Origin: Phaeosaccion multiseriatum
Taxonomy: Eukaryota; Protista; Ochrophyta, other classes
Assembly: GCA_965112735.1 (NCBI GenBank)
Contig: OZ218964.1
Location: 1,178,001-1,242,000, forward strand
DNA: 64,000 nucleotides
Reading direction: 5' to 3'
The translations under genes were made by a program, and so were the position numbers. Positions within the stretch are counted from its first letter, which is position 1. Each line of letters starts with the position of its first letter. Below are positions 1,331-63,759 of the stretch, one piece after another. The notes under the pieces are model-generated. The model did no database searches. It saw nothing but the letters and a program-made list of their open reading frames with translations, and was not told the DNA's origin.

Positions 1331-2471
1331 GCTGCTGCTTCCGAACCAAGACGAGAGGGTGACGGGGTAAACCCCTCTGCCCGAGGTGACACCTTCCGAC
1401 AGAGCCCGTTGCGTCCAGGAGGGAGTGGTAACTCGAGGGAGGGGTTGGAAGGTGAAACGGGTCGGCTGAGTGTAGGGCTTTCGCGTACCAGCCGCCACGA
1501 GCAACACATCCACCTCCTCCTCCTCGTCGTCGTTGTCGTCGAATCCAGTCGTCGCCATTGCTGAGTGCGGAGGAGTGATACATCTCACTCGGTCTGTGGA
1601 GAGCAGCAGAGCGGGCACAATGTGGGGACCAAAGGCGCAGAGGGTGTCTTGGCGGCCAATGTTGAAGCCGGTCAGAGTCACCACGGTGCCTCCCGCTGCA
1701 CTCCCACGCGGGGGATGGATGGAAGTGAGCACGGCGAGAGGCTCGAAGGTGAAGCCCAGGGGGGCGCCGCGAGTCACAGGTTGGCCACCTATGGATACAG
1801 TCACACGCACCCCCAGGGGGGCGTTAGTCCATTCGCTGGGCAGAGCAGGGGTGACGCACACAACGCTCGAGGACGACTGCACCGTGCCGTTGCTGTGTAT
1901 CACCAACTGCTCATACTGCTGAGAAGAAGAAGCAGAAGAAGAGGAAGAGGAAGTGAAGGTGCATCGTACTGCCGCGGCCCGGTCAGAGCCCCCTCCTCCT
2001 CCGCCTCCGACGCGAAGATTGTCTCCGGCGATCCAGAGCTCCGTGCCTCCACCCGACGGGCCCGAGAGGGGCCAAAGTGATGTCACAACTGGCGGATGGA
2101 CGTATTCGAAGCGCAAGCCGCTGCTGGTGCGCTCCTGCCCTCCCACGGACACCTCCACGGCTACTGCTCCGGCTCGAAGCCCGACGGCGGGCGGCGAGAG
2201 GCAGCGGAGGCGAGAGGAGGAGTAGAACGTGGCTCGGCTGCTCGTAGCAGTCCGCATGCTGCTGCCGCTAGGGCCCGTGACCCGACTAGTGGTGGTGCTG
2301 TCGTCTCTTCCAAAGTGGCACACTAGGTCCGTGGTGTTGGGCCAATTTGCCCCTCGGACGAGGATCTCTTCCCCGCCGTAGATGGATCCAAAAGAAGGCT
2401 CCAATCCTAGCACCTCCGACGCCTCCACATACGTGAACTCCGTCCAATCACCACCACCACCACTAGTCGCA

Positions 2472-2521
<50 letters not shown>

Positions 2522-5500
2522 ACTGCTGTAGTCTTGGCCGTTGGTCGACACCGCCACGCTCACACTTCCCGGTGCGTGAGGAGGACTCAAGCACTCCAGC
2601 GTGAAGTCGTCAATGAACACTGCAGGTACGCTCAGCGTCTTCCCGAAGCGGCAGCGCAATAGAGACCTCGACCCAGAGCCACCTCCACCGCCATCCACTG
2701 CCATCTGGAACCCTTTGCCCTTGATCTGCACCGTGGTGGAGCCCCGGTGGGAGCCCGTCGTCGGACTCAGCTCGAGCACCGTCGGGACAGGTCCGTACGA
2801 GAAGGTGGCCGTGGATATCCAGGCTCGGAGGCCTCCTCCTCCTCCTCCACCACCACCACCACCCGTCACCACCGTGACCCGGGCAGTTATGTGGGCATCG
2901 GTGGTGGTGGTGCCATCGATCCCGGCGGCGGAAGGAGGACGGGGCGGAGTGATGCACTCGACCTGCCTCGACGACAGCCACCTGGCCGGTACGCTCACAC
3001 TCACACTGCCCCCATCACCACCGCCACCACTGCTGCTGCTGCTGCTGCTGCTGCTCCCGTTCTCAACAGACACACTGCCCACCCCATGTTCCTCCTCCTC
3101 GTCAAAGTCAAACTCGAACAGGCACTCCAGCCCTCCGAAAAGATTGACAAAGCCTTCGCCGGACACAACGACGCGGGTGCCCCCTCCCTCCCCTCCGTGG
3201 CTGGGCGAGACTCGAAGCACGCCGGTGGGCTGCAAGTAGCGGAAGTAGGTACCACGACTGCTGTGCACCGAAGACGACCCCCACGCCACGGTAAGAAGGG
3301 CCATCGGAATATCCGCACCACTGACGCCTAGACTACCATCGCCTCCTCCTCCCCCTTCCCCAAAGCCCCCGCTCCCTCCTGCCAGCGACTGAGCCACTGC
3401 ACTGAGCGGTGGCGACACACACGTCACAGTGTGCGTAGTTGGGTCCACTCGCAGGGGCAGGGCACGCCAAGTCCCAAACACACACGTCAGCTCACTGAGC
3501 GCTTCTGGCGAGGCAGGCAGCTGAGTGAAAGAGGTCGTCACCTCGGTGCCACCTAAGCTCCAGCCAAAGGCAGGCACTGCCTCCCCTACCATCTGCAGAG
3601 GCGGCACGTACGCAAAGGTCATCCGGGCCGAGGCGCCAACATCTTCCTCCTCCTCATCATCATCATCCTGCTGCTGAGAGGCAGGAGAGCCGTCCACAAG
3701 CAGCGAGACAGTGGTGTTGCCTTCCCACTCCGAAGGCGGGCTGACGCATTGCACCAATGTGCTGTTGACGAAGGTCGCCACGCTGTCCAGCCTGATAATA
3801 CCGATGCCGAGCCCAACCCCACCTTCATCGAAAGAAGGAGGAGAAGAAGCGAAGTGGCAGAGGATGCGGCTGTACGGGGAGAAACTGTTGCCCGATACGA
3901 CGATGAGTGTGCCACCCGTTGATGGTCCGCTGCGGGGCTGGATTGAGCGCACTCGAGTGGCTGCACGGTACGTCAGCGTGGCGGCTGGAGCTGACGACGA
4001 TGACGTCAGCGCGGATGTCATATACGACGTGGCACCGGAGGAGAAGTGATCGTCCACGCCGTTGAGAGTGACGCCCACGTGCACCCTCCCGGGGGGGTGA
4101 GGCGGCGTCTCGTGGCAAGTAATCTCGGTGGAGGAAACCCACACCGCGGCCGTCGTCATCCTCCTTCTTCTTCTGCCATCCTCTTGTTCCTCTCCTTCTG
4201 CGAGGCTTGACAACAATGACGAAGAAGGCGGGTCCTTGAATACGCAGGCCAGCGTGGCTGAGGGGTGGAAGCCGAAGCCGTAGAGCGTCAGCTGCCCCCC
4301 CCTGGCGCTCGTCCTGCCCGTCTCGGGGGCGTGTCTGGGCGATACAGCAGCCATGTGGGGCGCCTCGTAGTACGAATAGCCCAGGCCGGAGCGACTAAAG
4401 TCCGCACCCCCGTTAATCGACACCTCCACAATCACAGAGCTTTGGGTGGCGGTCAGGTCTTGATGAATGGGTTCCCACGGAGGCGTCAAACAACGTACAC
4501 TGCTGCCAACCAAGTGGTCCAGCAAGACGTCGTCGTTGTTGTTGTTGTTGTTGTTAGGTCGCTGGTCATCCGCGTCGTCGTCGAGTGTAGAAGATACGAG
4601 CGAAGCGAGCACGTTGCGCTGAATGCCGCCATCCTCACTAGAGAAGCGACAGTACAGCTCGTTGGACTCTGAAGCAGCCTCCAGCACGGACGCGCTCACC
4701 CCCGCCACAGCCACCGTCAGGCTCGTTCCTCCACACCCCGGACCGGAAACAGGCTCCAACGCCGTGGTGAGCACCGGCCTGACGAAGGTGTACGTGACGG
4801 CGTCGCTCTCGCTGGTCCAGTGCGCCCCTCCATCCGCCGACACAGCCAGCGCCACCTCCCCCTCGTGCCCCACATGAGAGGGGGTGGTGCATTGCAATTG
4901 TCGCCGACCTCGGCCTTCTCCTCCTTCGCTGCTGACCTCCTGGGCGGCGACGACGACACTCCCGAAGCGGCATTGCAGGCTGTTGCTTAGGCTGTTGTTG
5001 TCCTTCTCCTCGACGCCGTCGTCACCAGCTGTAGAGGCAGAGGAGACAGGCTTGCGTCCTGTCCATGTTACGGTCACCACCGAACCGCCCAAGCTGGACC
5101 CACGGGAGGGTGTGACGCTGTGCACCGTCTGAAAGGGGATGACATGGAGCCTGGCATAGGCCGTGGACATGTCCACTCCGTTGTTTGTCACGCGCACACT
5201 CACAGGACTGTCAACTTGTGTCACAGAGCGGGGTACAGTGCACTGCAACAGGGAGGGAGACAACCACAGTGCAGCCTCGGAGAGCACGCCTGTACAGGCT
5301 CGGGCAGTTGGTGGTACAGCAGTAGCTGTGGTGTTGTTGCTGCTGCCGCCTCCAAAGCAGCACGCCAGCGAGGGAGAGTTGCGGAAGCCGGAGCCCGACA
5401 CCAACACCAGCTGCTGCTGTTGGTCATCGGCCTGATGGTGGTCGTCGTCGTTGTCTTCGCCAACAGCATTGGGTCTCTCCAACACGGTGGATGGTGTGGT

Positions 5501-7927
5501 GTCCACAACCAAGACCTCCTCGAAGTGGAACCAAAGACCCGTGGACGCCGAGCTAGTGCTCAGGAAAGCCCCCCAATCACCACCACTCTCATCACTCTCA
5601 TCTCCCTCCTCAGTCTCGTCCTCATTCTTCGCCTTGGAGGAAGAGGAGGTGAGGCGACGGCTGCGGAGGTGCTCCCCCGAGACGATTCGAATGGGCATGG
5701 AGACCGATTGGGCTTGTGGAGGGGCCTCACAAACCACCTCCTCCGAGGAGAGCACGGTCGTGGAGAGGCCTTCCGTCTTACCAAAGTAGCACAGCGTCCG
5801 AGGGATAGACATGTCCTCCTCATCACCATCGCTCGCCAGGACGAGGGGGGTGAGGAAATTCGTCCCTGATACGGTTACACGCGTACCTCCCTCCAGAGGG
5901 GCCGACAAGGGCCGTACGGAGCGGATGGTGGGCGCGCTGGAGTAGTAGGCGAAGGTGTCATGACCGAAGGTGTTGTCATGGTCAACGTCATCACCATCAC
6001 CGCCGCCCTGCCCCTGCTCCTGCCCCTCTCGAGGAGTGCGAAGGCTCCAATCGAGCCCTCCGTTGAAGCTCACGCGCACCGACACCACCGCCGCTGTATC
6101 ACCAACTTCTGTGCCATTGCCGCTGCCGCTGCCGCTGCTGCTTGGACTCACACACCTCATCTCAGTGCTGGAAAGCACCAACGCGGTAACAATGTCCGCC
6201 TCCCCAAAGAGGCACACCGCTTGCTCTGTACTACCCACGGCAAAGTTTGCTCCGGTCACAGTCACTTCTGTCCCTCCCATACTCGGACCAAGCGAGGGAC
6301 TCAGCGAATGGACCACAGGCGGTAGCTGAAAGGCAAACGGCAAGGCAGGCGTGCTGAGTTGCTGCCCACCGTTGACAGTGACGCGTACGTCAGCAAGAAT
6401 GACGTCACTGTCACCGTCAGCGCCGTTCAAGTACGCACTTGCTGATGATCCCAGTCCTGGCACCCCCGGGCCCAAGAGGTCTGTGAGGGCAGGGGCCGAG
6501 CACTCCATGGTGGAGTTTGATATCCATCGCCCTTGCACCTGCACCGACACCGGCATCGGCACTGAGGAGTTGTGCCTCATCATCAGCTGGCGACGACTAC
6601 TGAAGTCACATGACAGGCCAGGTAAGTCAGGGAGGAACATTCCGTCCAGCAGGACCGATGTGCCTCCCCTGGCCGCTCCAGATGTCGGGTAGAGCGACGA
6701 GACGATGGGTGGGAGAGTGAAGTGGATGGGCCCTGCAGGGACCCATTCGTGTCCGTTAACCGTCACCCACAGCGAGTGAAGAGAAGCAACTTCGCTCCAC
6801 ACCTCACACGCGATGCTGCTGGATGACAGGAAGGAAGCGCTCACGTCCAATGGGGCAGCCGTAGCAGCACCACCGCCACTGGAACTTGTAGTAGAAGAAG
6901 GAGTGAGGCGGCAGCTGAGTTGTGGAGTGTCGAAGAAGCCCGAGCCTCGCACTACCACCCTCAAGGCGGAGGAAGAGGAAGAAGAAGAGGAAGAGGACGT
7001 CGTCTTGGGGCTGCTGTTGTGAACGATGCCCGCGTTGGGAGTCACAGAGTCCACTTGCGGGCTCCGCGCATACTTAAACACAGAGGAGCCCTTTGAGCTG
7101 CTGTTTGAGGTCCCGTCCGAGCTTCCGTTTGAGCTTCCGTCGTCGCCCTCAGCCTCACCTCCATCACCGGCGCTGCCGGTCAGAGGGAGCAAGCGTCTGC
7201 CGGCCATGCTTACGTGGAAGTCCACCTCCACATCCGTACTTGTGTTGGCGACGACCTCCAGTAAGGGAGGTGCCAAGCACATCAGGCTGGTGGCGTTGAC
7301 GAGCGTCGCCCTCACCTCGCGGAGACCGAACCAGCATGATAGCTCCACTGGGAGGGAAGAGGCTCTACCTCCACCTCCACCCTTAGTAGCATTTGTACCA
7401 CCAACAGTAGTGGGGGACTCAGGGCCAGCAGCAGGCCAAGCCATGGCCCTTGTTGTGAGCAGGTTTGCCCCGGTGACGGTTACGGGAGTCCCTCCGCCCA
7501 GCGCTCCGACGGCAGGGGTCAGCACAGACGAGATTTTGGGGTCTGCTGCGAAGACAAAGACCGCCCTGCCATGAGAGGTAAAATCTCTGCCGTTGTTGGA
7601 CATCTCCACCACGACTTCGAGACTGGTATCTCCCCTTCCGCCTCCTCCTCCTCCTCCTCCTCCTCCTCCTCCTCCTCCTCCTCCTCCTCCTCCTGCTGCT
7701 GCTGCTGCTGCTGGAGCTTTAGACTGTGACCGTGCGTTGTGAATCTTGCTGATCTGTTCTTGTCGGAGGAGAGGAATTGGGCACTCTGCCTCAGTGCTGG
7801 ACACCCAACGAGCAGCGACGATCCCTGCCTCGCCAAAGGAACACGATAGGCTCTCCGTATTGTCAAAGCCTGAGCCCCGCACCACAGCCACAGGCCGAGC
7901 TTGCGAGGAAGATGATGATGATGATGG

Positions 7928-8025: not shown

Positions 8026-10178
8026 GTGATGATGACATCTTCTCCCCCGGCTCAATCTCCAGCGTCGTGACCCATGAGGCGACCACTACCGTCGGATAAA
8101 CGGCAGCTACACGGAGAGAGGACACGTAGCTGAAAGTATGCGGCGACAGACGGGCGTTCGGCTCTGCCCGAAGGTGGTCGGACGAGAAGGTGAGGCCGTC
8201 CGTGCTCACACTCACCTCCACCAACACGTCGTCGCCAATCGCGAGTCCAAGGTCAATGTTGCCGGTCGGGGGGGCGGGGGGCGCCTTGCAGGTGAGAGCG
8301 GACTCCGAGATGAGTTGTGCAGGCACCACACTCTCGCCGAACTTGCAGCGTAAGAGAGTGTCACTGCTGCTGCCCATATGACTGCTGCTGCTACTGCTGC
8401 TGCTGCTGCTGTTGCGGCTGTCCATCTCTGTCTCGTCGACAAAGTTCTTGCCTGTGATAGTCACCACGGTGCCCCCTACACTGGGCCCGTTGCTCGGCTC
8501 CACGCGGCTCACCGTTGGCACAGGCATGTAGGAAAAGGGTAGCGCCGTGGCGGCTCCGACGACGGGGGCGGCTCCTGCACTGGCTCCTCGAAGGTCGAGA
8601 GAGACCAGTACAGCTTCGCTGCTGTAGTGATAGCTGGAGCTGTTGTAGTAGTCGTCGTCGCCATTGAGGGAGGAGGAGAAGCTTCGATTCCCTTCTCCTC
8701 CTTCTCCAAAGGCGGCGACAAGGCCAAGTGCAGGGGCGAAGCAAACGACGGTGGTTTCGTCCAGTTGCATAGCGGCCACTCGCCCTGCCCGGCCGAAGTT
8801 ACAGCCCTTGACGAGCATCGCTCCGCCACTGACACCACCGAAGTTAGCACCCTTGACCACGACTTCCCGATTGCCCGTGGAGTATCCTCGGGAGGGGAGG
8901 AGGCGGTGTATATGGGGGTCGGGGTGCACAGTCAGGACAAGTTGATGGTACAGCAGTGGTGCCACCACCCCGGCGACTGCTGTATCACCAACTGCTGATG
9001 CTGCTGCTGGCGACGTTTCTTCTGACGGGAAGAAGTCGACTCCGTTGATAGAAAGGGCCACATGTGCTTGTCCCACCGGCAGGCGCGCGGGCAGGGGACA
9101 CCTGACCTCCGTCCTAGACACCCAGTAGGCGGGCAACACCACAGCATCAAGAGCCCGCTTTGCTGCTGTAGCACCATCTGCGATGGACGAGAAGCGGCAG
9201 GAGAGTAAGGGCGACTCCCTGAAGCCGAAGCCGTTCAGTGTGACGACGGCTCCCTCAGAGGCCGTCTCTACAGTGAAACTCGGGCTCACCGCCAGCACAG
9301 TGGGCGCCGCCTCGTAGGCAAACATCCAGCGGCGGAGACTGAAGTCCACGCCGTTGGCTGAAACCGTCACTGCGACCTTCGCGTCCTCTCCGCTCCACTT
9401 GGGCGACACACACGTAACGACACTGGTGTCAGGATTGCTGCTGTTGCTGCTTTGCACGACTACGCTTTGCCTCGCACTCCTCCCCTGCCCACGCCCCTGC
9501 GGCCCAACGCTCTCAAAGCGGCACGCCACAACCTTGGTGCCCAGACCGGGCCCGGTCAGCACCACCTCCGTACCCCCGCTTAGAGAACCTGACAAAGGGT
9601 GCATGCTCTGCACCACGAGTGGCTCTGTCACAAAGGTGAAGGTCATGTGGGTCTGGAAACCCTCCTCACTCCCACCTGCCAGGCTCTGTCCAGTGCCATC
9701 CACGAGACGCACGGTCACCGTGCCGCCCTCTCCTCCTGCGCGGGCGGGCGTTACACAACCCACACGGTGTGCGTCGACCTTGCCCGCGGGTACAAGGTCG
9801 TGAGGCCCACCGCCGCCGAAGTCGCAGTAGTAAGGAACGTCTCCTGGCACCCTCGGTCCTGACAACACCACCTCCTCCTTCCCCTCCTCCAGCTCGAGAA
9901 GAGCAAGACCGCCGCTGATGGCAATGGTCACCATTGTGCCTCCCTCCACCGGCCCGAAGGAGGGCTGGAGCTTCGTCATCGTGGATACTCCGATGGCGGG
10001 GTGATACAAAAAGTCCGTCGCGCTCACCCCACCGTGCAGTGAGTCTCCTCGGCAGTTGCTTGATACCTCAAGGCGGATACGACCGGGGCCTGCCTGCATG
10101 CGGGATGGTGTGACACAGCGGACGTAGTCGCTCGACAGCCACACAGCAGCACTACTGCTGGTGCTGCTACTTGTGCTC

Positions 10179-10213: not shown

Positions 10214-13200
10214 CGTCGTGGTGCCAAAGTGGCAGCACAAGTCGACAGTGTTGCTAAAGTGTGCCCCCTTCACCACCACCTCTTGCCCCCCCAGCACGCT
10301 ACCCTGCGCAGGCTGTGCCCAGTGGGCCTCCGCCGCAGGCAGCACCAGGAAGGACCCCACTTGGAGCTCCACGTCACTGAAACTGCCACTGCCACTGCTG
10401 TAACTGCTGTCAAGGCGGGCGTTGTCATTCATTTGCAGCGACACTCTCACTTCGCCACTCCTGGAGAAGGCCGGAGTGGAGCAAGTCACAGCGAGGCTGA
10501 GGCTTCTTCCTTCCCTCCTCTCCTCCTTCTCGTGCTCTTGGACTGACCAGTTGGCAGGCGCACTGAGTGCTTCATTGAGGCCCTCCCTGACTCCTTCCTC
10601 GAGAAAGAGGCACCGCAAGGCAATACCGCCCTCGTTCTCCTCCTCCTCCTGCTGCTGCTGCGGCTGTTGTATCACCAACTGCTGCAGCAGCCTTGTTGCT
10701 TCCGAGGAGAAGTCGCCAATGGACAGTGTGGACCCTCCTCGCACATCCCCATAGGCGGGAGAGAGGAGCCTTCCTGCGAGGGGCAGCGCTCCTCCTGCCC
10801 TGTACTCAAAGCGGATGCTCGGCTCAGACTCAGTGGTGGTGCTGCGACCCCCCTTCTCATCCTCATCCTCACTACTCACCACCACCTCAACATTAACCCC
10901 ACCACTCTCCCGCCCCCTTCGGTATGGTGGTGATATGCAAACGATTTGGTTTGAGCTCAGATAGGCCGCCGGAACCCGTTCGCTGCCGTCAAACTCACAC
11001 GCCAAGGTTGGGGTGAAGGCAAAATTCGTCCCCGAGACAGTCACAACCGTTCCTCCGGCCGAGGGCCCCGAGGAGGGCTCCACTCGGATGATGGTGGGAA
11101 GCGTACGCAGGGAGAGGAGGTTCGTTGTCGTGGCGCTGCCGTCCGATGACGATGACGATGATGAAGATGAGAACGATGGAGGAGGTGAGTAGAAGTCCCG
11201 ACCGTTGAAGGTGAGCTCAACCTCGACGGTTACAACGGGTACTTCGTCCCCAGCTCCGGAGCCAGAGGAGGAGGAGGAGGAGGAGGAGGTGGAGGGCGGC
11301 AGCGTCATCGATGGCAGCTGACAGCTTGCTTCGTTGCTGGAGAGCACGTTGGCCTTGACCAGGAGGTGCTTGTTGATGCGACACGCGGCCGCGTGGGTGG
11401 CTCTGAAGTTGACTCCCCGGATCACTGCCGTAGCACCACCACCACCACCAACACTGCTGCTGCTGCTTCTGCTGCTACTTCCCATAGAAGAGAGTGACGT
11501 CAGCAGTGGCGTCTTGTGGTATGTGAAGTACGAGGCCGTCGCTGCTTTCGCCCCGGCCCCGATCATCGGTAGAGACAGCTTCACCGTTGCCCCAGCTGCT
11601 GCTGCTGCTGTTGCTGCTACCGCCTGTGCTTCCATTCGTCCCACCACGTCGTTGTCGTTCCCCAAAGTAGCGCTGGGTAGGAAGAAGGGGGGGAAACCAC
11701 CGTCTTTTCCCTCCTCCTCCCCCTTCTCTTGCTCCACCTCCAGCAGCAAGACAGCGAAGGGCACCGTGGCCACGTCCCCCCCTGGGCCCTCTACCCAGGG
11801 GGGGCTCTTGCACGTTAGCTCGGAGTGGGATTCGACCGTTGTCGGGACCCAAGTCGCCTCATCTCCCTCTCCGAACGCGCACACCAGCAGTTGGTGATAC
11901 AGCCGCGAAGAGGAGGAGGACGAGGAGGCATGGAGACTGGAGTTGAAGTTGAAGCCCGCCCCGCCAATGGAGAGCAAAGTGCCTCCTGCCAAGGCGCCCT
12001 CTCGCGGCTCCAGAGAAGTCAAGATAGGGTGCTTTCCACCTCCTGAGAGAGCTGCTTCCTCCACGTGGTAGGAGAACACCAGCACATGGTCGTCGCCAAT
12101 CACCACACCCCCACTGCTGCCCATATGCCTCTCAGCATTCTCCTTCTCCTCCTCATCATCGTCGTCCTCCTCCTCGGCGAAGAAGCGAAGGGCAATGGAG
12201 ACAGTCCTCCCGGGCACGCCAATGGGGGAGAGGCACCGCACCAGTCCCTGATTCACCACCGCCCCGGCGGCAAGCACCTCGCCCCCAAAGAGACAGGACA
12301 CCGAGCTACCCACGGGGAAGCCTGACCCGGCAATAGACACCTCTGTGTTGCCCAAGAAGGGCCCACCCACCGGGGACAGAGAGTGCACCCTCGGGGTCGG
12401 GGTGAAGGTAAAGCGTGAGAGGGCACTGGGCTGACTCAGCGTTGCTCCTCCGTTGTTGGAGACCGTTACAGAAACCGTCTGAGATCGACCGTCTCTGACG
12501 CGAGGAGGTTTGCACTTGATGTGATGGGCGGAGATCCACACGGCAGGCACTACTTCTGCCACCATCACCGTTCCATCTGCTGCCATCTCTGGGCTTGTCG
12601 TCGGAATGCCATTGCCATCGGTATCAGCACCATCGAAACGACAGACTAGAGTAGGGAGAGGCAAGAAGTTGTAACCTCGGACATCGATGACCTGCTCGCT
12701 GCCCTTGCTGCCGTCCTCCTCCTCGCCGGTGGTGGAAGAGGAGGAGCGGCCGATGAAGCCCTGCCGGGGCGACAGGCTGGTGACGATGGGAGTGGTGTGG
12801 ATGATCACTTCATGGACGTCGTCGGACAGCAGTAGCGGCGTGGTGTCGCCACCGCTCCATAAAGACAGGGGCATGCTGCGCGGTGGCTCCTGCTCGCTGT
12901 TGGCATTCGTCGTGGTCGCCAAATGAGGGTCGTTGAGAAGGAGAAGGAACGACTCCGGAATGGCGCAGGAAAGGGTCATCAAAAGGTCTCCTCCTACTTC
13001 CCCATCCACCTCCTCCTCTGTGCTGCCGCTTGTGGTGTTGGTAACGACGACGATTCCAACCCTCGCGGCAGGAACGAGTCCCAACTCGCCCAACCTGCAA
13101 GACAGAGACGGCGGCGCCGCTCCATCATCTTCTTTCCCTTCTCCTCCGTAAGCGAGGACCCTCGACCCCCACGCCTTGACAGTCAACACCATGCCCGCTT

Positions 13201-15942
13201 GGTCCACCACGGTAGGGCTGACCGAGGCAATGGCGAGTCTCTCTCTGTAGAAGAAGGTGGTGGTGGTGGTCGATACCGTCATACCTTCCTCGCTGCTGCT
13301 GCTGCTGCTGCCCCTGCGACTAAGCCTGAGCTCCACTCCACCCTCTCGCCCTTGAGGCGCCGATGGGCTCACACACGTCATCTTGTTCGGGCCGGCAAAG
13401 CGCGCGGGAACGGGAGGGGCAGTGGGACCGAAGTGACAAAGCAAGCCCCCCTCCTTCTCTTGGTCAAGCACGCTTCCGCTGCTAAAGTCGCTGTAGTCCG
13501 AGTCAGAGGCGTCAAAGGCTTGCCCCGTGATGGTAACAACGGTGCCTCCATCCACCGGGCCGGAGGTGGGGGAGAACGACAAGGTGCTGTCCCAGCGGCG
13601 AGGAGTGTATACCAACGTCACAACATCCTCCCCCTCGTGCTCCTGATAGTCCGCATGTTCACCCTCCTCCTCCAGGTCTTCGTATCCTACCCTGAGCGAA
13701 ACCTGGCCTGGAGGGTGTGCAGGGGCCGTGCAAACAGCCAGCATCGGCGATATCCACACGGCAGGCACGGCAATCACGCCACCACCATGCTGTTTCGAAG
13801 CACTATCACCAGTAGTGCTAGTAATGCCTCTTCCACTGCCATCCGAAGACGATCTGTTGGACCTTCCAAAGAAGCAGCGCAGGCCGTTACCAGCGAAGCC
13901 TGCCCCGTACACATAGACTGCCATCCCCCCCTGGGTAGGCAGAGAGGTGGGCAGTGCCTTGTAGAGCGCAGCAGGAGCAAGAAACTCAAACTCGCGCGAG
14001 GATGGTGACAAGTCCTGACCGTTACAGGATGTACGCACCAACACAGAGCCGGCCCTCTGTTGGGGAGGGGTGCGGCAAGTGGCCTGGCCTGTGCTGGCGT
14101 TGAAGGCCATCGCGGGCACCACGACAGTAGTGGCACTGGCAGCAGTAGTATCAGTAGTGCTGCTGTTGGTGCTGCCTTCGTTGTCCTCGTAGTGGTGCCA
14201 GGCAGTGCCATCATCGTCAAAGCTGCCGCCGCCGGTACCGTCGCTGCTGTTATCAAAGCTGCAAAACACCTTTCCGGAGGACGCGCACGCACCCACACCG
14301 GAGACACGGATCAGAGTGCCTCCTCGTGTGGGTCCACGATGCGGGGTGAGGTCCGTCACGCTCGCCGTGGGAAGGAAGCTGAAGCTCAGTTGTGCTTCCA
14401 GGTTGCTCTCTTGATCGTCTTGGTCTTGGTGCTCGCCCTCCTCGTCGCGGAAGGAGGAGGAGGAGGAGGAGGAGGAGGAGGAGGAGGAGGAGCACGCTCC
14501 GAAGACGTTACAGACCTGCACCTTCACTCCCTGTGCCTCCGTATGCGGCGCTGTCTTGCAGGAGAGATGGTTGGCGTCCAGCACCGTCGCGTTGACAACT
14601 GTGTCTCCGATCACGCACAGCATTCCTTGCTCGAAGTTGGCCCCTGTCAGTCGAAGCCTCGTTCCTCCTGCCGCCGGACCGGTCTGGGGCTGAACCTTCG
14701 CGAGTTTCGGGGTGGTGGCGATGGAGTAAGGCGTTGGTGCGGAGACAAAGCCCGATCCCGATGCTACTGCTGCTGCTGCTGCTGCTGTTGTTGTTGTGGA
14801 CCCTCCATATATGTGGGAGACGGAAACCTCGTGCTCCCCGGGGGGTAATAGCTGCCCCAGACCTCCTCCATGCGCGCACTCTACCATACTTGATGTGAGC
14901 ACTCTACCGCGCATCACCAAGTCATCATCACCTCCATCCACTGCCATCCCCCCTCCTACCCTTCGGAAGCGACAATACACGACCACCGTGGGGTCAAAAT
15001 TGGCTCCGAAGACAGTCACGGGGCCAAAGCCGGCCCGAGGGCGGATCCCGGTGACGACGGGGGTGGGCACAAAGTGGAAGGGCACTGACTGACGGCCGAC
15101 TGGCCGCCCGGTATCTGCGCAATCAGTTCATCAATCAATCAAGTAGACAATCGAACAAGCAAGGTCAAACAATTCAGTTAGTGTTAGTCAACGAAGGAGG
15201 GGGGGCGTGCTCAGGTGTGTGTGTGGGGTGTGTGGGGTGTGTGGGGTCGACACAAACTCAATACAACGATGTGACTGACCGACTAACTGACTGATTACAG
15301 AACTGAGTGAGTGAGTGAGTGAGTGAGTGAATGAGTGAGTGAGTGTGTGACTCACAACTGGTATACATACCTGCGTGGCGAAGTGTGAAGTGCACCACTT
15401 CCATCCGCCTGTGCGGCGGGGCCACACACGTCAACGTCGAAGAGTTGAGCCACTTTGCCCCTGCCGTGGAGGAGAAGGACAAGGAGGACAAGGAGGCGGG
15501 GCTAGAGCTGTTCCCGTCGTCGGTGTTGTTGGCTGCTCCTCTCGCTCTCTCCTGCTGCTGCCACCCTGTCTCCCCTCCCTCGTCAAAGGAGCACACCACA
15601 TCGGGCCGCCATCCGTTGCCGTCGCCATCTGTTGTCACAGTCACGAGAGTCGACCCCTCCATGGATCCGACGGTGGGCTCCAAGCCAACGACGGTTACGC
15701 TTTTGAGGTATGCGTATGTCAAACCACCCATGATTGGTACTGGCGACGCTCCCCGGCCCTCGGAGATACCCAACTTGACGGATTTGGCGCCTACGATGGA
15801 GGGCGGGGCCATGCACTGGAGCCGCTCGGTGGATGACCAACTGCTGTGTGACCAGCTGCGGCTGGGGGTGCGTGGCTGATCGAGTATCGTCCGCACCGCC
15901 GGCACGGACTGGCTCCCGAACCAGCAATAGAATGGGCCGCTG

Positions 15943-15977: not shown

Positions 15978-17938
15978 ACTGCTCTTGAGCCAGACGGAAA
16001 CGAGTGTACCGCCCAGCTCGGAGCCCTTCTGTGGCTCGACCTCCACCACTCCCAAGGCTCTGTAGAGGTAGCTGAGACCCCCCCCTCCCTCCTCCTCCGC
16101 AGGGCACACCACACCATTCACAAGGACGTCAACAGAAACTGAAACTGAAACCTGCCCGCCATCTCCCCGGCCCCACGCTTCACTTCCACTGCCATCCGTA
16201 TCACCATAATCACCACCATTGGCGACGACTGATGCAAGGGGCGGACTCTTGCACTCCACGAGTGTGGACCGCAGCCAACGTGCCGGCGTGGTCACAGACA
16301 CAGAGTCTCCTTCTCCTCCTCCTCCAACACCACCCCCACTGAAGCGGCAGCTGAACGAATCGCCTTGGGCAAAGTGCCGGCCGCTGATCCTCACCACGGC
16401 TCCACCGGAGGAGGGGCCTGTCGAGGGCTCAATCGCCAGGACGATAGGCTCTAGCGTGTACGTGAAAACAGGAGCCCCGCCTTCGGGCGTGTGAAAGACG
16501 TAATGGCCATACACATCGTCCTCGTGCTCGTCGTTATCGTCGCGGATTCTTGACAAGGACACCTTCACCTGTACGTGTTGGTCATCGTCGTCGGGCTCTC
16601 TGAGGAGGGCAGGGACAGCGCAACGCACTTCAGAGGAAGACACGAAGCTCGCCCGCACCAGCACTGGAGGGGAAGAGCCTCCCTCTCCATCGTCGTCGTC
16701 ACTGTGAGTCTCAGTGACGAGAGCGAATCTGCACAGGAGGCCAAGGCCACTGTTGTGATTGGTGACACCGTCAAGTAGTCCGAGCTCCCCCTCGTTGTCG
16801 TCGACGGCTTGCGTCGGGTCTCGAAAGCCCTTGCCGAGTACTGAGATGACCGTTCCGCCCAAGGGGCTGCCCTCCAAAGGCTGCACACTACGCACAGACG
16901 CGGCTTCGACGTACTCAAACCAAGCCGCAGCAGCGCCGTCGCCAACAGGCGAATCACCAACTGGCGACGCAGAAAAGAAGTCGACGCCGTTGTTGCTCAC
17001 CGCCACCACCACAGCCTGCCCCCCTCCTGGGATGGCAGTGGATGGGATCGGCCTTGGTGCCACACACCTCAGCTGCGTGGAGCTCACAAAGTTCGCCATC
17101 ACCTCCACATGTCCAAAGCGTACCCTAAGGGCACTCGTCTGCGCAAAGTTGCTGCCAAAGACAGTCACCAGGTCGCCCCCCTCCGTGGATCCTCGGTGCG
17201 GTGTCACTTTCTCCACCACCGCAGGCGGGTAGTAGGAGAAGCGCACCCCCTCCGTGGAGGTGAAGTCCTCGCCATTAGCGCTCACCTCCACTAAAGTTTG
17301 ACGGAGAGGACTGAGAGCATTTCCACCACCGCCATCACCACCACCATCATCATCAGATAGGGGAGGTGCTAGGCACTGTACTTGCCGAGGTGACACCCAC
17401 TGCGCCGGTACCACTTGACCACCGAAGCGACACACAAGAGCACTGCTGTCTACAAAGTTGTGTCCGCTCACTTTGACCAGCGTACCGCCTGTGACAGGGC
17501 CGCGAGAGGGGGAGGCCCAGAGCACAGACATGGGTCTAAGGTAGGTGAAGCCCAGCGCGTCGAAGGTGAAGTCCCCTCCTCCGTTGGCGCTTACCTCCAC
17601 CGGCACGAGGCCGGGGCGGTGCGCGGGCGGGGCCTCACAGACCACCGCAGTCCGCACTGCTGTATCACCAGCTGCTGTATGGTCTTCTTCTTCTTCATCA
17701 TCACCTTGGCGAAGGGTCTCGATGGACAGTGCCGGTACCACGACTGACCCAAAGCTGCAGCTGACCGCATCCAATCGTTGCTGTATCACCAACTGCTGCT
17801 GCTCATCCTCAGCCTCGCCCTCGCCCGTGGGAAAGTGAAAGAGGTTACTGACAACAATGGTGACAGTGGTGCCGCCCTCCAGGCTCCCGCGCGAGGGGGC
17901 CATCGAAAGTGCAGATGCCGGTGGCCGGAAGAGAAACG

Positions 17939-51333: not shown

Positions 51334-53328
51334 TGCACACACACATGCACACATACATGCACACAACACGCAACGCACAGGCTTTTGATGGTGAGCAGAC
51401 CTACCGGCCGCCGGCAGACGGGCGCTCCAATAGCGGCGGCATCATCAGGAGCAGCAGCAGCAGCAGCAACTTGGGCTCCTCCGGCAACAACCAAAACAAG
51501 AATCGCCCGCAGGCACTGCCCGCAGTAGACTTGTCGGCTTTGCCTCCCTTCCTGCAACAGACGGGGCCCGCCATTGGCACTTTTTATAGGAACCACAAGA
51601 TGGATGCCATGGGGAGGAAGCCAGGCGAAAGGGAGGCAGAGGAGGCGGCGGTAGCAGCCGCAGGAGGGGGAGGATGGCGAGGAGGGAGGTGGGTGGGTGG
51701 GAGGTGGGGAGGAGGAGGAGCGGGGTCTACCCCCGGAAGCAGTCGAAGTGGAAGCTTCCATTCCAATGGAGGCAGGAATGTGGCCAAGACGGGCGAGGAT
51801 GGCAATGCCATAGCGGCAGCAGTCCAGGAAGCGGCGGCTGCGACAGTTGGTGATCCAGCAGTTGGTGATCCAGCAGCGGCGGTGGCTGGAGGGGAAGCAA
51901 GCGGTGGGGCGGGAGGAGGCGGGGGAGGAGCAACTAGGCCCCCTGCATTGGCACTGGAGAAGGTGTCTTCGGGGGGGGCGTCCCTGTCGGGGATGATGAA
52001 GAGAAGCCCCATCAACACTCTCGTCAATGGAGGGAAAGCGGGCATTGCGAGGTGTTTCAACGAGGTGAGTGAGTGAGTGAGTGAGTGAGTGGTTGGGTAG
52101 ATGAGGGAGGAAGGGAGTGGATGGGTGAGTGAGGGTGTGGGGGGGTGAGGGAGTGAGTGAGTGGGTGGGTGGGTGGGAGTGAGTGCGTGAGTGAGTGGGT
52201 GAGTGACTGGGTTGAGTGAGTGAGGGAGTGATGGGATGGGGGTGGGAGGGAGGGAGGGAGGGAGGGAGGGAGTGAGTGAGTGGGTGAGTGAGTGGGTGAG
52301 TGAGTTAGTGAATGAGTAGATGAATGGACGAGGGAAGGAGTGGGTGAGTGGTTGAGTGAGTGGATGAGTGAGTTTGTGAGCGAGTGCGTCAGTGAGCGAG
52401 TGAGTGAGTGGGTGAGTGAGTGAGTGCGTGAGGGAGTGAGTGAGTGGATCCACGTGGCCAAACCAAAGTCGAACCCACTTGGGAGGGTCAAAGTAATTGA
52501 CAACTCCCGCAATCTTATGGGAGTATGGATGACTCCCCTCTCCTCTCCCTCCCCCCCTCGTCTCTCTAACCCCCGCCGCTTTGCTTCACCGTGCTGTCCT
52601 GGCCTGCCCTCTACTGGGCCTGTCTGCCTGTCCTCTACTGGGCCTGTCTGTGTGTCTGTCTGCCTGTCCTCTACTGGGCCTGTCTGTCTGTCTGTCTGCC
52701 TGTCTGTCTGTCTGTCTGTCTGCCTGTCTGTCTGCCTGTCTGTCTGCCTGTCTGTCTGCCTACCTGCCTGCCCCCCTCCTGCTCATACATACATACGTAC
52801 GTACGTACGCACACACGTCACACGTACACATCTCTCTCTCCTAATGACAAATCAAAAGGTTCCCAGCAAGTTCTTTAGTAAGGACTTTTCTTTGGAGAGT
52901 CCCGAAGTGTTCGAGGAGCTGGTGGACAATGGGGGAGGACCGGAGAAGCAAGAGGCCCTCACTGCTCACCTTGACCTTATCGAAGTCTGCCTGCTCAATC
53001 AGATCTCGGCCAGGTACGTCTGTCTCTGTCTGTCCATCTGTCTGTGTATCTATTTTGTCTTTCTGGACATCAACAGGCTGCCCCCAGAGAAGCTGACGAG
53101 AGTGAGTGGTGCAGTGAAGATCATCGGGAGCGGATCCCTCTAAACGCCGATAAGGACGAGGAGGCCTGTCTATCCGTCTGTCTGTCTGTCTATCCGTCTG
53201 TCTGTCTGTCTGTCTATCTGTGTGTCTGTCTCTCTGTCCATCTGTCTGTCTACCTGCCTGTCTGTTAATCTCTCTTTCTGGCTGTCTGTCGGTCTGTCTG
53301 TCAATCTGTCTGTCTGTCTGTCTGTCTC

Positions 53329-53366
<38 letters not shown>

Positions 53367-53416: not shown

Positions 53417-53473
<57 letters not shown>

Positions 53474-58700: not shown

Positions 58701-58752
58701 GTCAGTCAGTCAGTCAGTCTTTCAGTCAGCCTGTCATTCAGTCAGTCAGTGT

Positions 58753-58788
<36 letters not shown>

Positions 58789-60544: not shown

Positions 60545-61685
60545 CGCTCCTCCTGTTCCTCCTCGTGCTGCTATTTTCTTGCCGTTACTGCTGCTGCTAG
60601 TGCTGCTGCTGCTGCTGGCGGTGGTGTTGGTGGTGGGGGTGGTGTGTTTCTTCTTTCCCTGCGCTTGCTGCTGCTGCTGCTGCTGTATCACCAACTGCTG
60701 AGGCCTGCGAGACACCTTGACCTTGAGATGCCCGCTCTCCACGGCATTGGCCAGGGCCCCAGTGATAACGTAGTGATTGATGCTGTAAGCCGTGTACTTG
60801 AAGAGGTCCCCGAGGATGTCTTGACACAGCAAGTGGTTCACGAAAGCCTCGCTCTGCTCTCGGCTCAACTCCGTTGGTCGGCTGAGCACCCCAGGCAACT
60901 ACAGCCGGGGGGGAGGAGGGGGGGAGACGTAGAGAGAGATAGAGAGAGGGAGAGAAGTGACACAGACAGAGAGAGAGGGAGAGGGAGAGGGAGACACAGA
61001 GAGAGAGGGAGAGAGACAGGCAGACAGACAGAGAGGGAGAGAGAGACACACACACAGAGAGAGAGAGAGCAAGACGGAGAGAGAGTGGGGACGGAAACGA
61101 CCGACATGAGTGAGTGAGTGAGAAAGATGCTCATGACGAGGAAGAGATAGGGAATGGCAATGGCAATGGCAATGGCACTGGCTGGGAGAAGAAGGGGGCG
61201 GGGGGGGGGAGGGGAAGGGCTCAAAATCCTTGAGGCTCCTTCCCATCACTTCATCCCTCACCCCACCCCCTCCAGCAGGAAGTGACTAAACTGACAGACA
61301 CGCAGTCACCCACCTGCTTCTTCTGCCTCCAGTAGTCAGTGAGCTGCTTGCACGTAACACTGTCCCCCTTGGCATTGACATGCCTGAGCACGGCAATGAG
61401 AGACAGCGCATGACGCGTCATATCCACCTCAACAAGCTGAAACTGTGGCTGCCCCCCCTCGCCCCCCCCACCCCCAGCAGAAGCAGCGCAGTTGTCGCAG
61501 GTACCCTCACAGGCGCCTCGGTCGAAGGGCTCCCCGAGAGCGTCTGCCAAGAGCTTTCGTCTAGAGGGAGGGCGGGGGGGGGGCGGGCGTTTGTCATCGT
61601 CATCATCATCACCACCACCATCATCATCATCATCATCATCATCATCGTCACCACCATCATCATCCTACTCCTCATCCTCCTCCTC

Positions 61686-61717
<32 letters not shown>

Positions 61718-61817
61718 CATGATCACCATCATCATCATGATCATCATCATCATCACCATCATGATCACCATCGTGATTACCATCATGATCACCATCATCA
61801 TCGTCATCATCACCATC

Positions 61818-61879
<62 letters not shown>

Positions 61880-61941
61880 GATTACCATCATCATCACCAT
61901 CATCATCACCATCATCATCATCATCATCATCATCACCATCG

Positions 61942-62023
<82 letters not shown>

Positions 62024-62057
62024 CATCACCATCATCATCATCACCATCACCATCATC

Positions 62058-62115
<58 letters not shown>

Positions 62116-63759
62116 CCATCATCACCATCATCACTCTCTACCTGCACGTCCCGGGGTCTTGTGCGTAACTCATCATCTTGCGAAGACAAGCCACCCCGTT
62201 CTTACTCTCGTGGGACTGACCCGCGAGGGCAGAAGCGTCGCCAGCCTGTGCATGTGTGTGGGGGTGTGGTGCACACGTCGTTCGGAGGAGAGAAGAACGG
62301 GCAGTTGGTGGTACAGCAGTACACGTTGGTGGTACAGCAGCAGTGAGGAGGTGAGCAGCAGAAACCTATGACTCAAGACTCCCTCATACATACTTCACAC
62401 CCATCTGTCTCTCTGTCTCTCTTTCTCTCTCTCTTCCTCTTCTTCATCTCTCTCCCTCTCTCTCTCTCCCTGTCTCTCTCAATCTCTCTCTCTCTCCCTC
62501 TCTCTCTCTCCCTCTCTCTCTCTCTCCCTCTTTCTCTCATTCGCTCCCTCACCCGATAGAAGAGCACGCAATCGGCCTTCTTCCCGTCCCTGCCTGCCCT
62601 GCCGCTCTCCTCTGATGGGGGACATGGAACGAGGGTGAATATACCAACACAAGAAACAGACATATTGAAGAGGAAGGGAAGGGAAGGGAAGGGAAGGGAA
62701 GGGAAGGGAGAGGCAAGAGGAGGAAGAGAGGAAGAATATTGTAGAGTACAAGGTCAGCACAAGTTCCCTCTCTCGTCTCTCATCTCTCACCTCGTCACTA
62801 CCTCACTGCCTCACTGCCCCACTACCTCATTGCCTCACTACCTCACTACCTCACTACCTCACTACAATACGACCTCACTAACTCACTATCTCACTGCCTC
62901 ACTACCTCGCGGCCTCACTACCTCACTACCTTCCCTTCTCACTCACGATAGTAGCCCTCCACGCTCTTGCTCAACGAATAGTGCACCACGTAGCGCACGT
63001 CGAGCTTGTTGATGCCCATCCTGTACATTCACAGTCACAGTTGGCACAGTCACAGTTGGCACAGTCACAGAGTCAGCTTCTTGTTGCCCGTCCTCAGGCC
63101 CTGTGCATTCGCAGTCACAGTTGGCAAAGGCACAATCAACGTCCACACGCTTCCTTGCTACGCCCCTTCGCCACCTTGCCCCCTGCCCCCCTCACCCTTC
63201 CCAAGCTAAGCTCACCACCCCCTTGCAAGACAAAAGAGCTGTCTAGCCAGAGCATAGGCAGGCAGGGTATGGGGCAAGTGTAGGGTATGGGGCAAGTATA
63301 GGGTATAGAAAGGGCCGAGGAGGCATAGGGTATGTATGTAACACATACCCGAAGGCAATGGTTGCCACGCACACTTGGATCAGGCAGGGTATGGGGCAAG
63401 TATAGGGTATGGGGCAAGTATAGGGTATAGAAAGGGCCGGCGAGGCATAGGGTATGTATGTGACACGTACCCGAAGGCAATGGTTGCCACGCACACTTGG
63501 ATCAAATCCCTCTGCCACGCCCTCTGCACGCGTGCCCTCCCTTGGTCGTCTGAAGAAGAATTGTGAACATAAAAAGTTAGTGATTGACGAAGCTCCTTGT
63601 GAATACCTTCTCTCCCAGGCCGGCGGGATGGCACCAGTAGCACCCCGCCCCTCTCTCCTTCCTTCTCTCCCTCTCTCCATCTCCTTCCCTGCCCACCTGC
63701 TTGCCTGCCTGCCTGCTTGCCTGCCCGCCTGCTTGCCTGCTTGCCTGCCTGCCTGCTTG

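What the first reader, a model, noticed from the sequence alone, without database searches (positions are those of the whole stretch)
1896..62340. A ~21-bp DNA motif (CAGCAG-TTGGTGATA-CAGCAG) overprinted on exons of unrelated genes in five of six reading frames
Seen: at least 9 exact copies of the 15-mer core (chance expectation about 1e-4 for 64 kb on two strands with uniform bases) and about 20 near copies. They occur in both orientations in the giant IPT gene, ORC3, VPS54 and RECQL, and in a RECQL intron (62301, 62325). The motif is translated as AVGDTA (8977, 19481, 23048, 35953, 38119), QLVIQ/H (1896, 10668, 17779, 60680), AVSPTA (21350; AISPTV 36985), LYHQL (11885, 8941) and S-W-x-YS (24574, 23829). 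Conservation is therefore at DNA level, not protein level. Established analogies: Neisseria/Pasteurellaceae DNA uptake sequences, Chi sites and HIP1 bend protein sequence in this way, but those are bacterial. Inference: a dense genome-wide signal (chromatin, insulator, replication or recombination factor site; the core contains CAGTTG, an E-box/MYB-type site, next to TGATA, GATA-like), or the frame-preserving 9-bp footprint of an element that targets (CAG)n tracts. This is my best candidate for an undescribed system.
Basis: partly seen in the sequence, partly recalled or inferred. Interest (0 to 1): 0.92.

Follow-up and report, generated by a model that had tools for sequence, protein, structure and literature searches.

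The report
Tiny DNA unit copied among CAG-repeats
A fixed 21-letter DNA unit, CAGCAG-TTGGTGATA-CAGCAG, occurs about thirty times in this 64-kb stretch of a repeat-rich stramenopile alga, mostly inside protein-coding exons in whichever reading frame stays open, and it matches none of the mobile-element or repeat classes I tested.

Summary
CAGCAGTTGGTGATA occurs 10 times exactly and CAGTTGGTGATACAG 7 times. About 30 copies lie within 2-3 mismatches, against 0.03-0.05 expected at 0-1 mismatch under codon-preserving and order-5 Markov nulls. It is the top non-simple word of the window. Short-read contigs from two samples confirm individual copies.

It always has the same orientation relative to CAG triplets. 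It is read in five frames. The sixth frame contains TGA, and there only stop-killing variants survive. In the giant IPT/TIG gene most copies sit in loop or linker insertions.

It has no inverted ends, no target duplication, no longer relatives, no fold and no Rfam match. New here:
- The left flank is exactly CAGCAG far more often than a random 9-bp insertion would give, so about 21 bp is copied, or at least 6 nt of homology is needed.
- An identical 24-mer variant sits at two unrelated sites.

Best reading, at modest confidence: a self-propagating interruption copied between CAG tracts by microhomology template switching during repair or replication, then filtered by selection. A dedicated mobile machinery or a bound signal is not excluded.

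The scan found the same motif before in at least 15 other windows of this genome, and no follow-up agent found the mechanism.

The parts
1897..1909 (-). motif copy, exact 13-mer; read QLVIH in the 5042-aa IPT/TIG ORF
5301..5324 (+). variant copy (TTGGTGGTA); 24-mer CGGGCAGTTGGTGGTACAGCAGTA identical to 62298-62321; antisense in the giant ORF (AVPPTA)
6096..6108 (-). motif copy, 1 mismatch; read EVGDT
7395..7407 (-). degenerate GGTA-variant copy (2 mismatches)
8938..8956 (+). degenerate inverted copy 20 bp from the 8977 copy; read LYHQL; its 3 differences are all synonymous
8977..8997 (-). exact 21-mer; read AVGDTA; lies in a linker between TIG domains
9168..9180 (-). degenerate copy (2 mismatches)
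10664..10684 (-). 21-mer with 1 mismatch; read QLVIQ in a TIG loop insertion
11885..11905 (+). 21-mer with 1 mismatch in a non-CAG context (flanks 6/4); antisense, read LYHQL
15831..15843 (-). stop-frame copy with TGA>TCA (SSWSS)
16951..16963 (-). copy with 1 mismatch, non-CAG context
17657..17677 (-). isolated 21-bp unit (flanks exactly 6/6), T>C variant; confirmed in read contigs
17778..17798 (-). 21-mer with 1 mismatch; read QLVIQ in a TIG loop insertion; confirmed in read contigs
19129..19141 (-). degenerate copy (2 mismatches), in a linker
19481..19501 (-). exact 21-mer inside a CAG tract; read AVGDTA; short-read contigs break here
20504..20524 (-). GGTA-variant copy; present with 0 differences in a contig of the second sample (X5)
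21095..21115 (-). copy with T>C variant in a TIG loop insertion
21350..21370 (+). 21-mer with 1 mismatch; antisense, read AVSPTA
23048..23068 (-). exact 21-mer; read AVGDTA; in a linker
23830..23843 (-). degenerate stop-frame copy with TGA>TCA (TWSYS)
24574..24594 (-). stop-frame copy with TGA>TTA (SWLYS) in a long CAG tract
30809..30829 (-). copy (G>C variant) in a CAG tract outside any long ORF
35951..35971 (+). copy in the ORC3-like upstream exon; read AVGDTA
36984..36996 (-). antisense copy in the ORC3-like 870-aa ORF; read AISPTV
38119..38172 (+). two copies 33 bp apart (tandem 33-bp unit x2.4) in the ORC3-like ORF; read AVGDTA..AVGDRA
51841..51876 (+). two overlapping tandem copies (15-bp unit x2.2) sharing the GATCC variant
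60680..60700 (-). exact 21-mer; left flank exactly CAGCAG, right flank a long CAG tract; read QLVIQ in a 359-aa ORF
62298..62343 (+). two GGTA-variant copies in tandem; the first is the 24-mer identical to 5301-5324

Best explanation
The unit (CAG)2-TTGGTGATA-(CAG)2 is a self-propagating interruption of CAG microsatellites. It is copied as DNA from one CAG site to another when a replicating or repairing 3' end that finishes in CAGCAG anneals to the CAGCAG of a copy elsewhere. The end then copies across TTGGTGATA-CAGCAG and returns to its own template through the same microhomology. This is template switching of the SDSA / MMBIR kind.

Even a bare CAGCAG site can receive the unit, which gives the isolated 21-bp units. 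Longer tracts give copies embedded in tracts. The flanks can later grow or shrink by slippage.

Selection acts only as a filter. In exons, only copies that keep the frame, lack the in-motif TGA and fall in tolerant loops or linkers survive.

Shown:
- copying acts at the DNA level;
- the link to CAG and the orientation relative to CAG are fixed;
- CAGCAG flanks are in excess;
- transposon hallmarks are absent;
- the stop filter operates.

Inferred: the template-switch mechanism itself, and why this one sequence won.
For: - The 9-mer is flanked by CAG in a fixed orientation and is never found in a CTGCTG context.
- It lies within 24 bp of 9 of the 42 (CAG)>=4 tracts.
- It accounts for about half of all interruptions of 9 bp or more in CAG tracts. 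Every other complex interruption is a singleton.
- Similarity between copies ends in the CAG flanks (24-60 bp). No longer element exists.
- There is no target duplication beyond chance, no fold and no Rfam family.
- The perfect left flank is exactly CAGCAG in 8 of 16 copies against 0.165 expected (p=0.0014). The right flank shows the same trend. This fits a need for about 6 nt of homology.
- CAGCAG sites are the commonest class of tract (139 of 220).
- Local tandem duplicates share private variants, and a 24-mer variant is identical at two sites 57 kb apart. This shows copying of variants, not convergence.
- 12 of the 19 copies in the IPT/TIG gene fall in HMM insert states or linkers, and stop-frame copies all carry a stop-killing change.
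- Differences from consensus are 9 synonymous to 23 non-synonymous, roughly what I would expect without constraint.
Against: - A generic homology-driven process should spread many different interruptions, yet only this family has spread. A sequence-specific bias is therefore still needed and is unexplained.
- The two identical 24-mers (5301, 62298) sit in non-CAG contexts. Their variant bases reach the very edges of the shared segment, so they were copied with almost no flanking homology.
- Several good copies have only 1-5 nt of CAG on one side.
- The integrity of the 9-mer correlates only weakly with flank length (Spearman -0.30, p=0.11).
- I found no empty or filled allele, and no orthologous site, to show what an event looks like.
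- The sample is about 30 copies from one window.
Confidence: 0.4

Rival explanations
1. A dedicated mobile machinery moves it. One version is a sequence-specific transposase, recombinase or nuclease. Another is a CAG-tailed non-LTR retroelement whose reverse transcript is primed on CAG tracts and joins back at an internal CAG run. Either would insert a discrete unit of about 21-24 bp, so the motif would be the smallest non-autonomous passenger of an element located elsewhere in the genome.
For: - The unit looks discrete, with modal flanks of 6 and 4-6 nt.
- Only one sequence family has spread.
- An exact 24-mer subfamily occurs at two sites without flanking homology, like transposon subfamilies.
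- The mismatch spectrum (7, 15 and 3 copies with 0, 1 and 2 mismatches) fits a fairly recent burst.
- Earlier notes of the scan report retroelements in this genome (unchecked).
Against: - The unit has no terminal inverted repeats (its ends are direct CAGCAG).
- There is no target-site duplication beyond chance.
- Among about 30 copies none is longer, and there is no gradient of truncation.
- The window holds no candidate master element.
- 21 bp is below the size of any described eukaryotic non-autonomous element (my own knowledge).
Confidence: 0.25
2. It is a working cis-signal kept by selection. Candidates are the binding site of a sequence-specific protein (a recombination or repeat-stabilising factor, in the manner of a minisatellite core or a PRDM9 motif) or the target of a 21-nt small RNA. 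Copying would then only supply the raw material.
For: - The unit is 21 nt, the length of a small RNA.
- Copies are mostly in the sense orientation in transcripts: about 19 sense to 4 antisense in long ORFs.
- Three or four loci show nascent tandem duplication around the motif, as expected of a recombinogenic core.
- Many copies are exact.
Against: - The orientation bias follows from CAG, GCA and AGC being tolerated as Gln, Ala and Ser runs, and it matches the orientation of the CAG tracts themselves.
- Copies lie wherever CAG tracts lie, not at particular gene features.
- Diverged copies change at all codon positions in about neutral proportions.
- One old copy kept its peptide while losing the DNA word (8938-8956).
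- In the stop frame the word is readily given up.
- No binding, chromatin or small-RNA data could be obtained.
Confidence: 0.15
3. It is not a DNA element at all, but a peptide motif, a chance product of codon usage in CAG-rich exons, or an adapter or assembly artefact.
For: Most copies lie in low-complexity coding sequence rich in CAG triplets.
Against: - The motif is read in five frames on both strands.
- The codon-preserving and order-5 Markov nulls give 0.03-0.05 copies against 22 observed.
- Copies also lie outside long ORFs (30809, 62298).
- Contigs of runs from two samples reproduce the copies.
- The giant ORFs stay open across 19 copies.
Confidence: 0.02

Closest known systems
Rickettsia palindromic elements and yeast or algal organelle GC-cluster / palindromic mini-repeats (selfish short repeats inserted in frame into genes; from my own knowledge)
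   Same: Short non-coding DNA units are copied many times, including into protein-coding genes. There they survive only when they keep the frame and fall in tolerant surface loops.
   Different: Those units are 30-150 bp, palindromic (hairpin-forming) and found in bacterial or organellar genomes. This unit is 21 bp, not palindromic, shows no fold, is nuclear, and is tied to CAG microsatellites.
Bacterial over-represented words: Neisseria/Pasteurellaceae DNA uptake sequences, Chi, cyanobacterial HIP1
   Same: A 9-15-nt word occurs far above chance throughout genes, is read in several frames and bends protein sequence.
   Different: Those words are maintained by uptake, RecBCD or methylation-linked processes in bacteria, and they occur in any sequence context. 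This is a eukaryote, and the word occurs only with CAG flanks in one orientation.
Microhomology-mediated template switching (FoSTeS/MMBIR) and SDSA-templated insertions
   Same: Short templated insertions bounded by a few nucleotides of microhomology, with no target duplication and no element ends. This fits the CAGCAG borders.
   Different: Known cases copy nearby or arbitrary sequence once. A single sequence amplified many times across a genome (roughly a thousand by an earlier unchecked note) has, to my knowledge, not been described.
Microsatellite-targeting non-LTR retrotransposons and microsatellite-associated repeats (for example the Dong, Waldo, Kibi and Koshi LINEs; mini-me of Drosophila; from my own knowledge)
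   Same: Repeat families that insert specifically into, or travel with, simple-sequence tracts.
   Different: Those are hundreds to thousands of bp long with truncation series and coding masters. Here nothing is shared beyond about 21-24 bp.
Minisatellite core sequences (Jeffreys core; the PRDM9 13-mer)
   Same: A 10-15-nt core is shared by many repeat loci across a genome and is associated with local tandem duplication (3-4 loci here).
   Different: Those cores are degenerate and lie inside long tandem arrays. Here most copies are single, near-exact, and embedded in a different (trinucleotide) repeat.
Canonical excision footprints of Tc1/mariner-type transposons
   Same: The same few extra bases are left between duplicated target triplets at many sites.
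   Different: Those footprints are 2-7 bp and derive from the inverted ends of an element that is present. Here the segment is 9 bp, shows no inverted-end relationship, and no parent element was found.

Membership tests
DNA transposon / MITE | terminal inverted repeats | tested here: not met
   The unit ends are direct (CAGCAG...CAGCAG). Single copies show no fold better than shuffles.
DNA transposon / MITE | target-site duplication of fixed length outside the element | tested here: not met
   Direct repeats at unit borders are 0-1 nt in 21 of 29 copies, no more than at random positions. The CAG(CAG) flanks themselves could be read as a 3-6-bp duplication, but they cannot be told apart from homology.
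Non-LTR retrotransposon / SINE fragment | series of 5'-truncated copies sharing a common 3' end and longer upstream sequence | tested here: not met
   blastn of +/-200-bp flanks of all copies against the window finds only the 24-60 bp of motif plus CAG. Information content falls to background outside about -7..+20.
Non-LTR retrotransposon / SINE fragment | a full-length source element encoding reverse transcriptase and ending in the unit | not testable with these tools
   Only 64 kb of the genome is readable, and the collections searched do not hold this organism.
Bacterial-type genome signature word (DUS / Chi / HIP1) | the word occurs independently of flanking sequence context | tested here: not met
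   27 of 39 9-mers (<=1 mismatch) have CAG on at least one side, none lies in a CTGCTG context, and the orientation relative to CAG is fixed. The organism is a eukaryote (best TrxR hits Ectocarpus, 57-59%).
Protein sequence motif | one reading frame and conservation at the amino-acid level | tested here: not met
   The motif is read in five frames on both strands. Changes are 9 synonymous to 23 non-synonymous.
Ordinary interrupted microsatellite | interruption derived from the repeat unit by one or two substitutions and private to a locus | tested here: not met
   TTGGTGATA differs from CAGCAGCAG at 7 of 9 positions and recurs at more than 25 loci. Other complex interruptions are all singletons.
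Introner / intron-generating element | copies are spliced introns carrying or creating splice sites | tested here: inconclusive
About 23 copies lie inside uninterrupted long ORFs and keep them open, so they need not be spliced. No RNA run was available to test splicing directly. I saw no such arrangement in this window.
Minisatellite core family | core embedded in tandem arrays at many loci | tested here: inconclusive
   Only 3-4 of about 25 loci show 2-2.5 tandem units (38101-38178, 51844-51876, 62298-62343). The rest are single copies.
Known structured RNA | match to an Rfam covariance model | tested here: not met
   No family reaches its gathering score anywhere in the window.

The most novel reading that the evidence does not exclude
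The unit is driven by a sequence-specific agent: a protein, or a 21-nt small RNA, that recognises TTGGTGATA between CAG repeats. The agent would bias break repair so that uninterrupted CAG sites are converted to interrupted ones, a homing-like drive without an intron or a gene on board. Each inserted unit may in turn seed new CAG microsatellites from its own (CAG)2 arms. That would be a new class of ultra-short nuclear selfish DNA that rewrites protein loops genome-wide.
Probability: 0.15. Interest if true: 0.9.

Novelty: categorically new. Interest (0 to 1): 0.74.

Why it matters
If the copying is real and ongoing, this alga shows that a DNA unit far below the size of any known eukaryotic mobile element can still multiply. 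It has no ends, no hairpin and no gene. It can also insert the same 5-7 amino acids (AVGDTA, QLVIQ, AVSPTA, LYHQL) into loops of unrelated proteins.

It would link microsatellite instability to a copy-and-spread process. It gives a natural system for measuring ectopic template switching between simple repeats. It would also explain part of how low-complexity inserts arise in proteins.

The stop-frame variants give a clean, countable readout of selection filtering a mutational input.

Tried and rejected
Searches outside the window
- Exact 21-mer in viral contigs: 0 hits.
- Exact 21-mer in JGI metagenome contigs: one hit, a bacterial-looking contig with a single chance copy.
- Homologues of the CHASE histidine kinase: only distant, mostly bacterial-type kinases, and no close relative.
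- Homologues of the thioredoxin reductase exon: best hits Ectocarpus at 57-59%. No species close enough for orthologous-site comparison is in the collections.
- Look-up of the kinase by exact sequence: not on record.
- Control loci from Ectocarpus (33 kb) and a metagenomic contig holding a TrxR homologue (20 kb): no copy of GTTGGTGATAC. This is a weak negative.

Sequencing runs
- No run is labelled RNA. All holders behave as DNA of the same organism.
- The second-sample run X5 has low coverage with 0 differences.
- So I found neither splicing evidence nor presence/absence polymorphism.

Tests inside the window
- Search for paralogous 'empty sites': none.
- Rfam: nothing.
- Folding of single copies: z-scores from -0.6 to +1.5. 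Only the inverted pair at 8938/8977 folds, as any inverted pair must.
- Correlation of core integrity with flank length: weak and not significant.

Literature
- Searches for the word and for comparable phenomena returned only primers and organelle or bacterial repeats.

Ideas rejected
- Ultra-short GT..AG intron (GTGATACAG is 9 nt, too short for a spliceosome).
- Telomere-type addition (an earlier unchecked note points to a TTAGGG-type telomere in this genome).
- Derivation from a tRNA D-loop or an snRNA (only 7-8 nt resemblance, from memory).
- Sequencing adapter.

Full report
**1. What is there**

The window is GC-rich (55-63%) and dense with simple repeats.

Copy counts:
- CAGCAGTTGGTGATA occurs 10 times exactly.
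- CAGTTGGTGATACAG occurs 7 times exactly.
- Twenty sites lie within 3 mismatches of the 21-mer CAGCAGTTGGTGATACAGCAG.
- 29 sites lie within 2 mismatches of the 13-mer CAGTTGGTGATAC.

Dinucleotide shuffles give none. I also ran two stricter nulls on the 15-mer CAGTTGGTGATACAG. One shuffled codon/triplet order, with the two giant ORFs shuffled in frame. The other was an order-5 Markov chain trained on the window itself, motif included. They give 0.03 and 0.05 copies at 0-1 mismatch against 22 observed. At 3 mismatches they give 1.2-4.7 against 10 observed.

An unbiased census of 11-, 12- and 14-mers puts pieces of this motif in all the top places among non-simple words. Information content is high from about -7 to +20 around the 13-mer and falls to background outside that range.

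**2. It is in the DNA of the organism**

Logan contigs of four runs from two samples and studies were laid on 17500-23400.
- Unique contigs reproduce individual copies with no differences. X1 and X3 cover 17500-17930 with the copies at 17657 and 17778. X5, from the other sample, covers 20450-20616 with the copy at 20504.
- Contigs end at the exact 21-mers (19484/19500 and 23048/23065).
- More than 100 contigs per run align across the 19481-19501 copy and then diverge on either side.

So the unit with its CAG arms is present at many other places in the genome.

No run behaved as RNA, and the second sample showed no differences. Splicing and polymorphism therefore could not be addressed.

**3. 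Where it sits**

Nineteen of the 29 copies are in one giant minus-strand gene. It consists of a 5042-aa ORF that runs off the window start and a 4150-aa ORF (15258-27710). This gene is an IPT/TIG-repeat protein, and an iterated HMM finds 63 TIG domains.

Twelve of the 19 copies fall in HMM insert states or in linkers, next to poly-Ser, poly-Glu, poly-Gln or poly-Ala runs. These are insertion-tolerant loops rather than conserved codons.

Other copies lie in:
- an ORC3-like gene, whose two ORFs give collinear but sub-threshold ORC3_N hits;
- a 359-aa ORF without a family;
- DNA outside long ORFs (30809, 62298).

VPS54 and RECQL were not verified.

**4. DNA level, not protein level**

The unit is read as [26 protein letters not shown] and CCITNC-type strings. 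The sixth frame reads AGT TGG TGA TAC. All five copies in that frame inside the 4150-aa ORF have TGA changed to TCA (four) or TTA (one).

Differences from consensus in ORF copies are 9 synonymous to 23 non-synonymous. That is roughly what I would expect without constraint on either the peptide or the DNA word.

One old inverted copy (8938-8956) has kept LYHQL through three synonymous changes while losing the DNA word.

The sense bias (about 19 to 4 in ORFs) follows from the orientation of the CAG tracts themselves, which must be read as Gln, Ala or Ser.

**5. Relation to CAG tracts**

The 9-mer TTGGTGATA (<=1 mismatch) has CAG on both sides in 16 cases and on one side in 11. It is never next to CTGCTG.
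- Nine of the 42 (CAG)>=4 tracts carry it.
- It makes up about half of all interruptions of 9 bp or more in CAG tracts. Every other complex interruption is a singleton.

New here: among copies with perfect CAG on both sides, the left arm is exactly CAGCAG in 8 of 16. A 9-bp insertion at a random CAG|CAG junction in the window's own tracts would give 0.165 (chi-square p=0.0014). The right arm shows the same trend, 6 of 16, p=0.07.

Several copies are isolated units of about 19-21 bp in non-CAG DNA, for example 17657-17677 with arms of 6 and 6 and 11885-11905 with arms of 6 and 4. So either about 21 bp is the copied unit, or copying needs about 6 nt of homology on each side.

**6. Tests for known classes**
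- No similarity between copies extends beyond 24-60 bp of motif plus CAG, and the window holds no paralogous empty site.
- There is no target duplication beyond chance.
- The ends are direct, not inverted, and single copies fold no better than shuffles.
- There is no Rfam family.
- A variant 24-mer, CGGGCAGTTGGTGGTACAGCAGTA, is identical at 5301 (antisense in the giant gene) and at 62298 (another locus). The flanks are unrelated. This shows that variants are themselves copied.
- Tandem duplicates share private variants (38101-38178, 51844-51876, 62298-62343).

**7. Organism and spread**

The thioredoxin-reductase exon is closest to Ectocarpus and other stramenopiles at 57-59%. No closer relative is in the collections.

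The exact 21-mer is absent from viral contigs. It occurs once, by chance, in a bacterial-type metagenome contig. GTTGGTGATAC is absent from 33 kb of Ectocarpus and from 20 kb of a metagenomic contig holding a TrxR homologue.

The scan has met the same motif in at least 15 other windows of this genome. Several follow-up agents reached the same description: same orientation, about a third of tracts, a TTGGTGGTA variant, and roughly a thousand copies. None found the mechanism. One of them placed an 11-base word (letters withheld) at intron ends. I did not see that arrangement here.

**8. Interpretation**

The most economical mechanism is template switching or SDSA between CAG sites. A 3' end finishing in CAGCAG anneals to a copy elsewhere, copies TTGGTGATA-CAGCAG and returns.

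This explains the fixed orientation, the CAGCAG arms, the lack of element hallmarks, the isolated 21-bp units at bare CAGCAG sites (the commonest class, 139 of 220 tracts) and the embedded copies in long tracts.

It does not explain why only one interruption has spread, nor the 24-mer copied without flanking homology. Those two points keep a sequence-specific machinery or a bound signal alive as rivals. I put the template-switch reading at 0.4, a dedicated mobile machinery at 0.25, a selected cis-signal at 0.15, and artefact or peptide motif at 0.02.

**9. Novelty**

The word itself appears in the literature library only in unrelated papers, presumably as primers. Searches for comparable phenomena returned only organelle and bacterial short repeats.

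The unit failed most of the membership tests I could run for transposons, retroelement fragments, signature words, protein motifs, ordinary interrupted microsatellites and known RNAs; the introner and minisatellite-core tests were inconclusive. The phenomenon is real, abundant and unexplained. I rate it high but not maximal, because the data here are about 30 copies from one window and the mechanism is inferred.

Noticed in passing
window 2-27710 (-): One giant IPT/TIG-repeat gene. It has a 5042-aa ORF running off the window start and a 4150-aa ORF, separated by about 130 bp (15128-15257) of simple repeats, probably an intron. An iterated HMM finds 63 TIG domains, many swollen by low-complexity loop insertions.
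   Followed up: partly
window 8938-8997: An exact sense copy and a degenerate inverted copy 20 bp apart form a hairpin-capable pair inside the coding sequence (DNA fold -16.3 kcal/mol, z -2.0). The inverted copy differs from consensus only by three synonymous changes, so it still reads LYHQL.
   Followed up: partly
window 5301-5324 and 62298-62321: An identical 24-mer variant of the motif (CGGGCAGTTGGTGGTACAGCAGTA) sits at two unrelated sites without CAG-tract flanks. This is a sub-family that was copied with almost no flanking homology.
   Followed up: partly
window 58329-58788; also 43548 and 62795-62915: The (GTCA)115 array holds seven copies of the same interruption, GTCAGTCTTTCAGTCA. Two (GTGA)n arrays 19 kb apart share the variant unit GTGAGGTAGTGA. 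Tetranucleotide arrays may therefore carry recurring interruptions too.
   Followed up: no
window 42798-43534, 52065-52446, 53166-53491, 61594-62133: Very long pure microsatellites lie between genes: (TGAC)184, (GTGA)96, (CTGT)81 and (TCA)180. This points to unusually high slippage or weak repeat control in this genome.
   Followed up: no
window 39169-42387 (-): A single-ORF 1072-aa hybrid histidine kinase with CHASE, HisKA, HATPase_c and receiver domains. Its nearest database relatives are bacterial-type kinases at 33-41% identity over the kinase part only.
   Followed up: partly
window 44511-47550 (-): A large-type thioredoxin reductase in at least two exons, with a long insertion between the FAD/NAD and dimerisation domains. 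Best hits are Ectocarpus at 57-59%, which places the organism among stramenopile algae with no close sequenced relative in the collections.
   Followed up: partly
window 35752-38849 (+): An ORC3-like gene. Two consecutive ORFs hit ORC3_N at collinear profile positions (184-226 and 258-321), both below Pfam's threshold. It carries four motif copies in three frames or orientations.
   Followed up: partly
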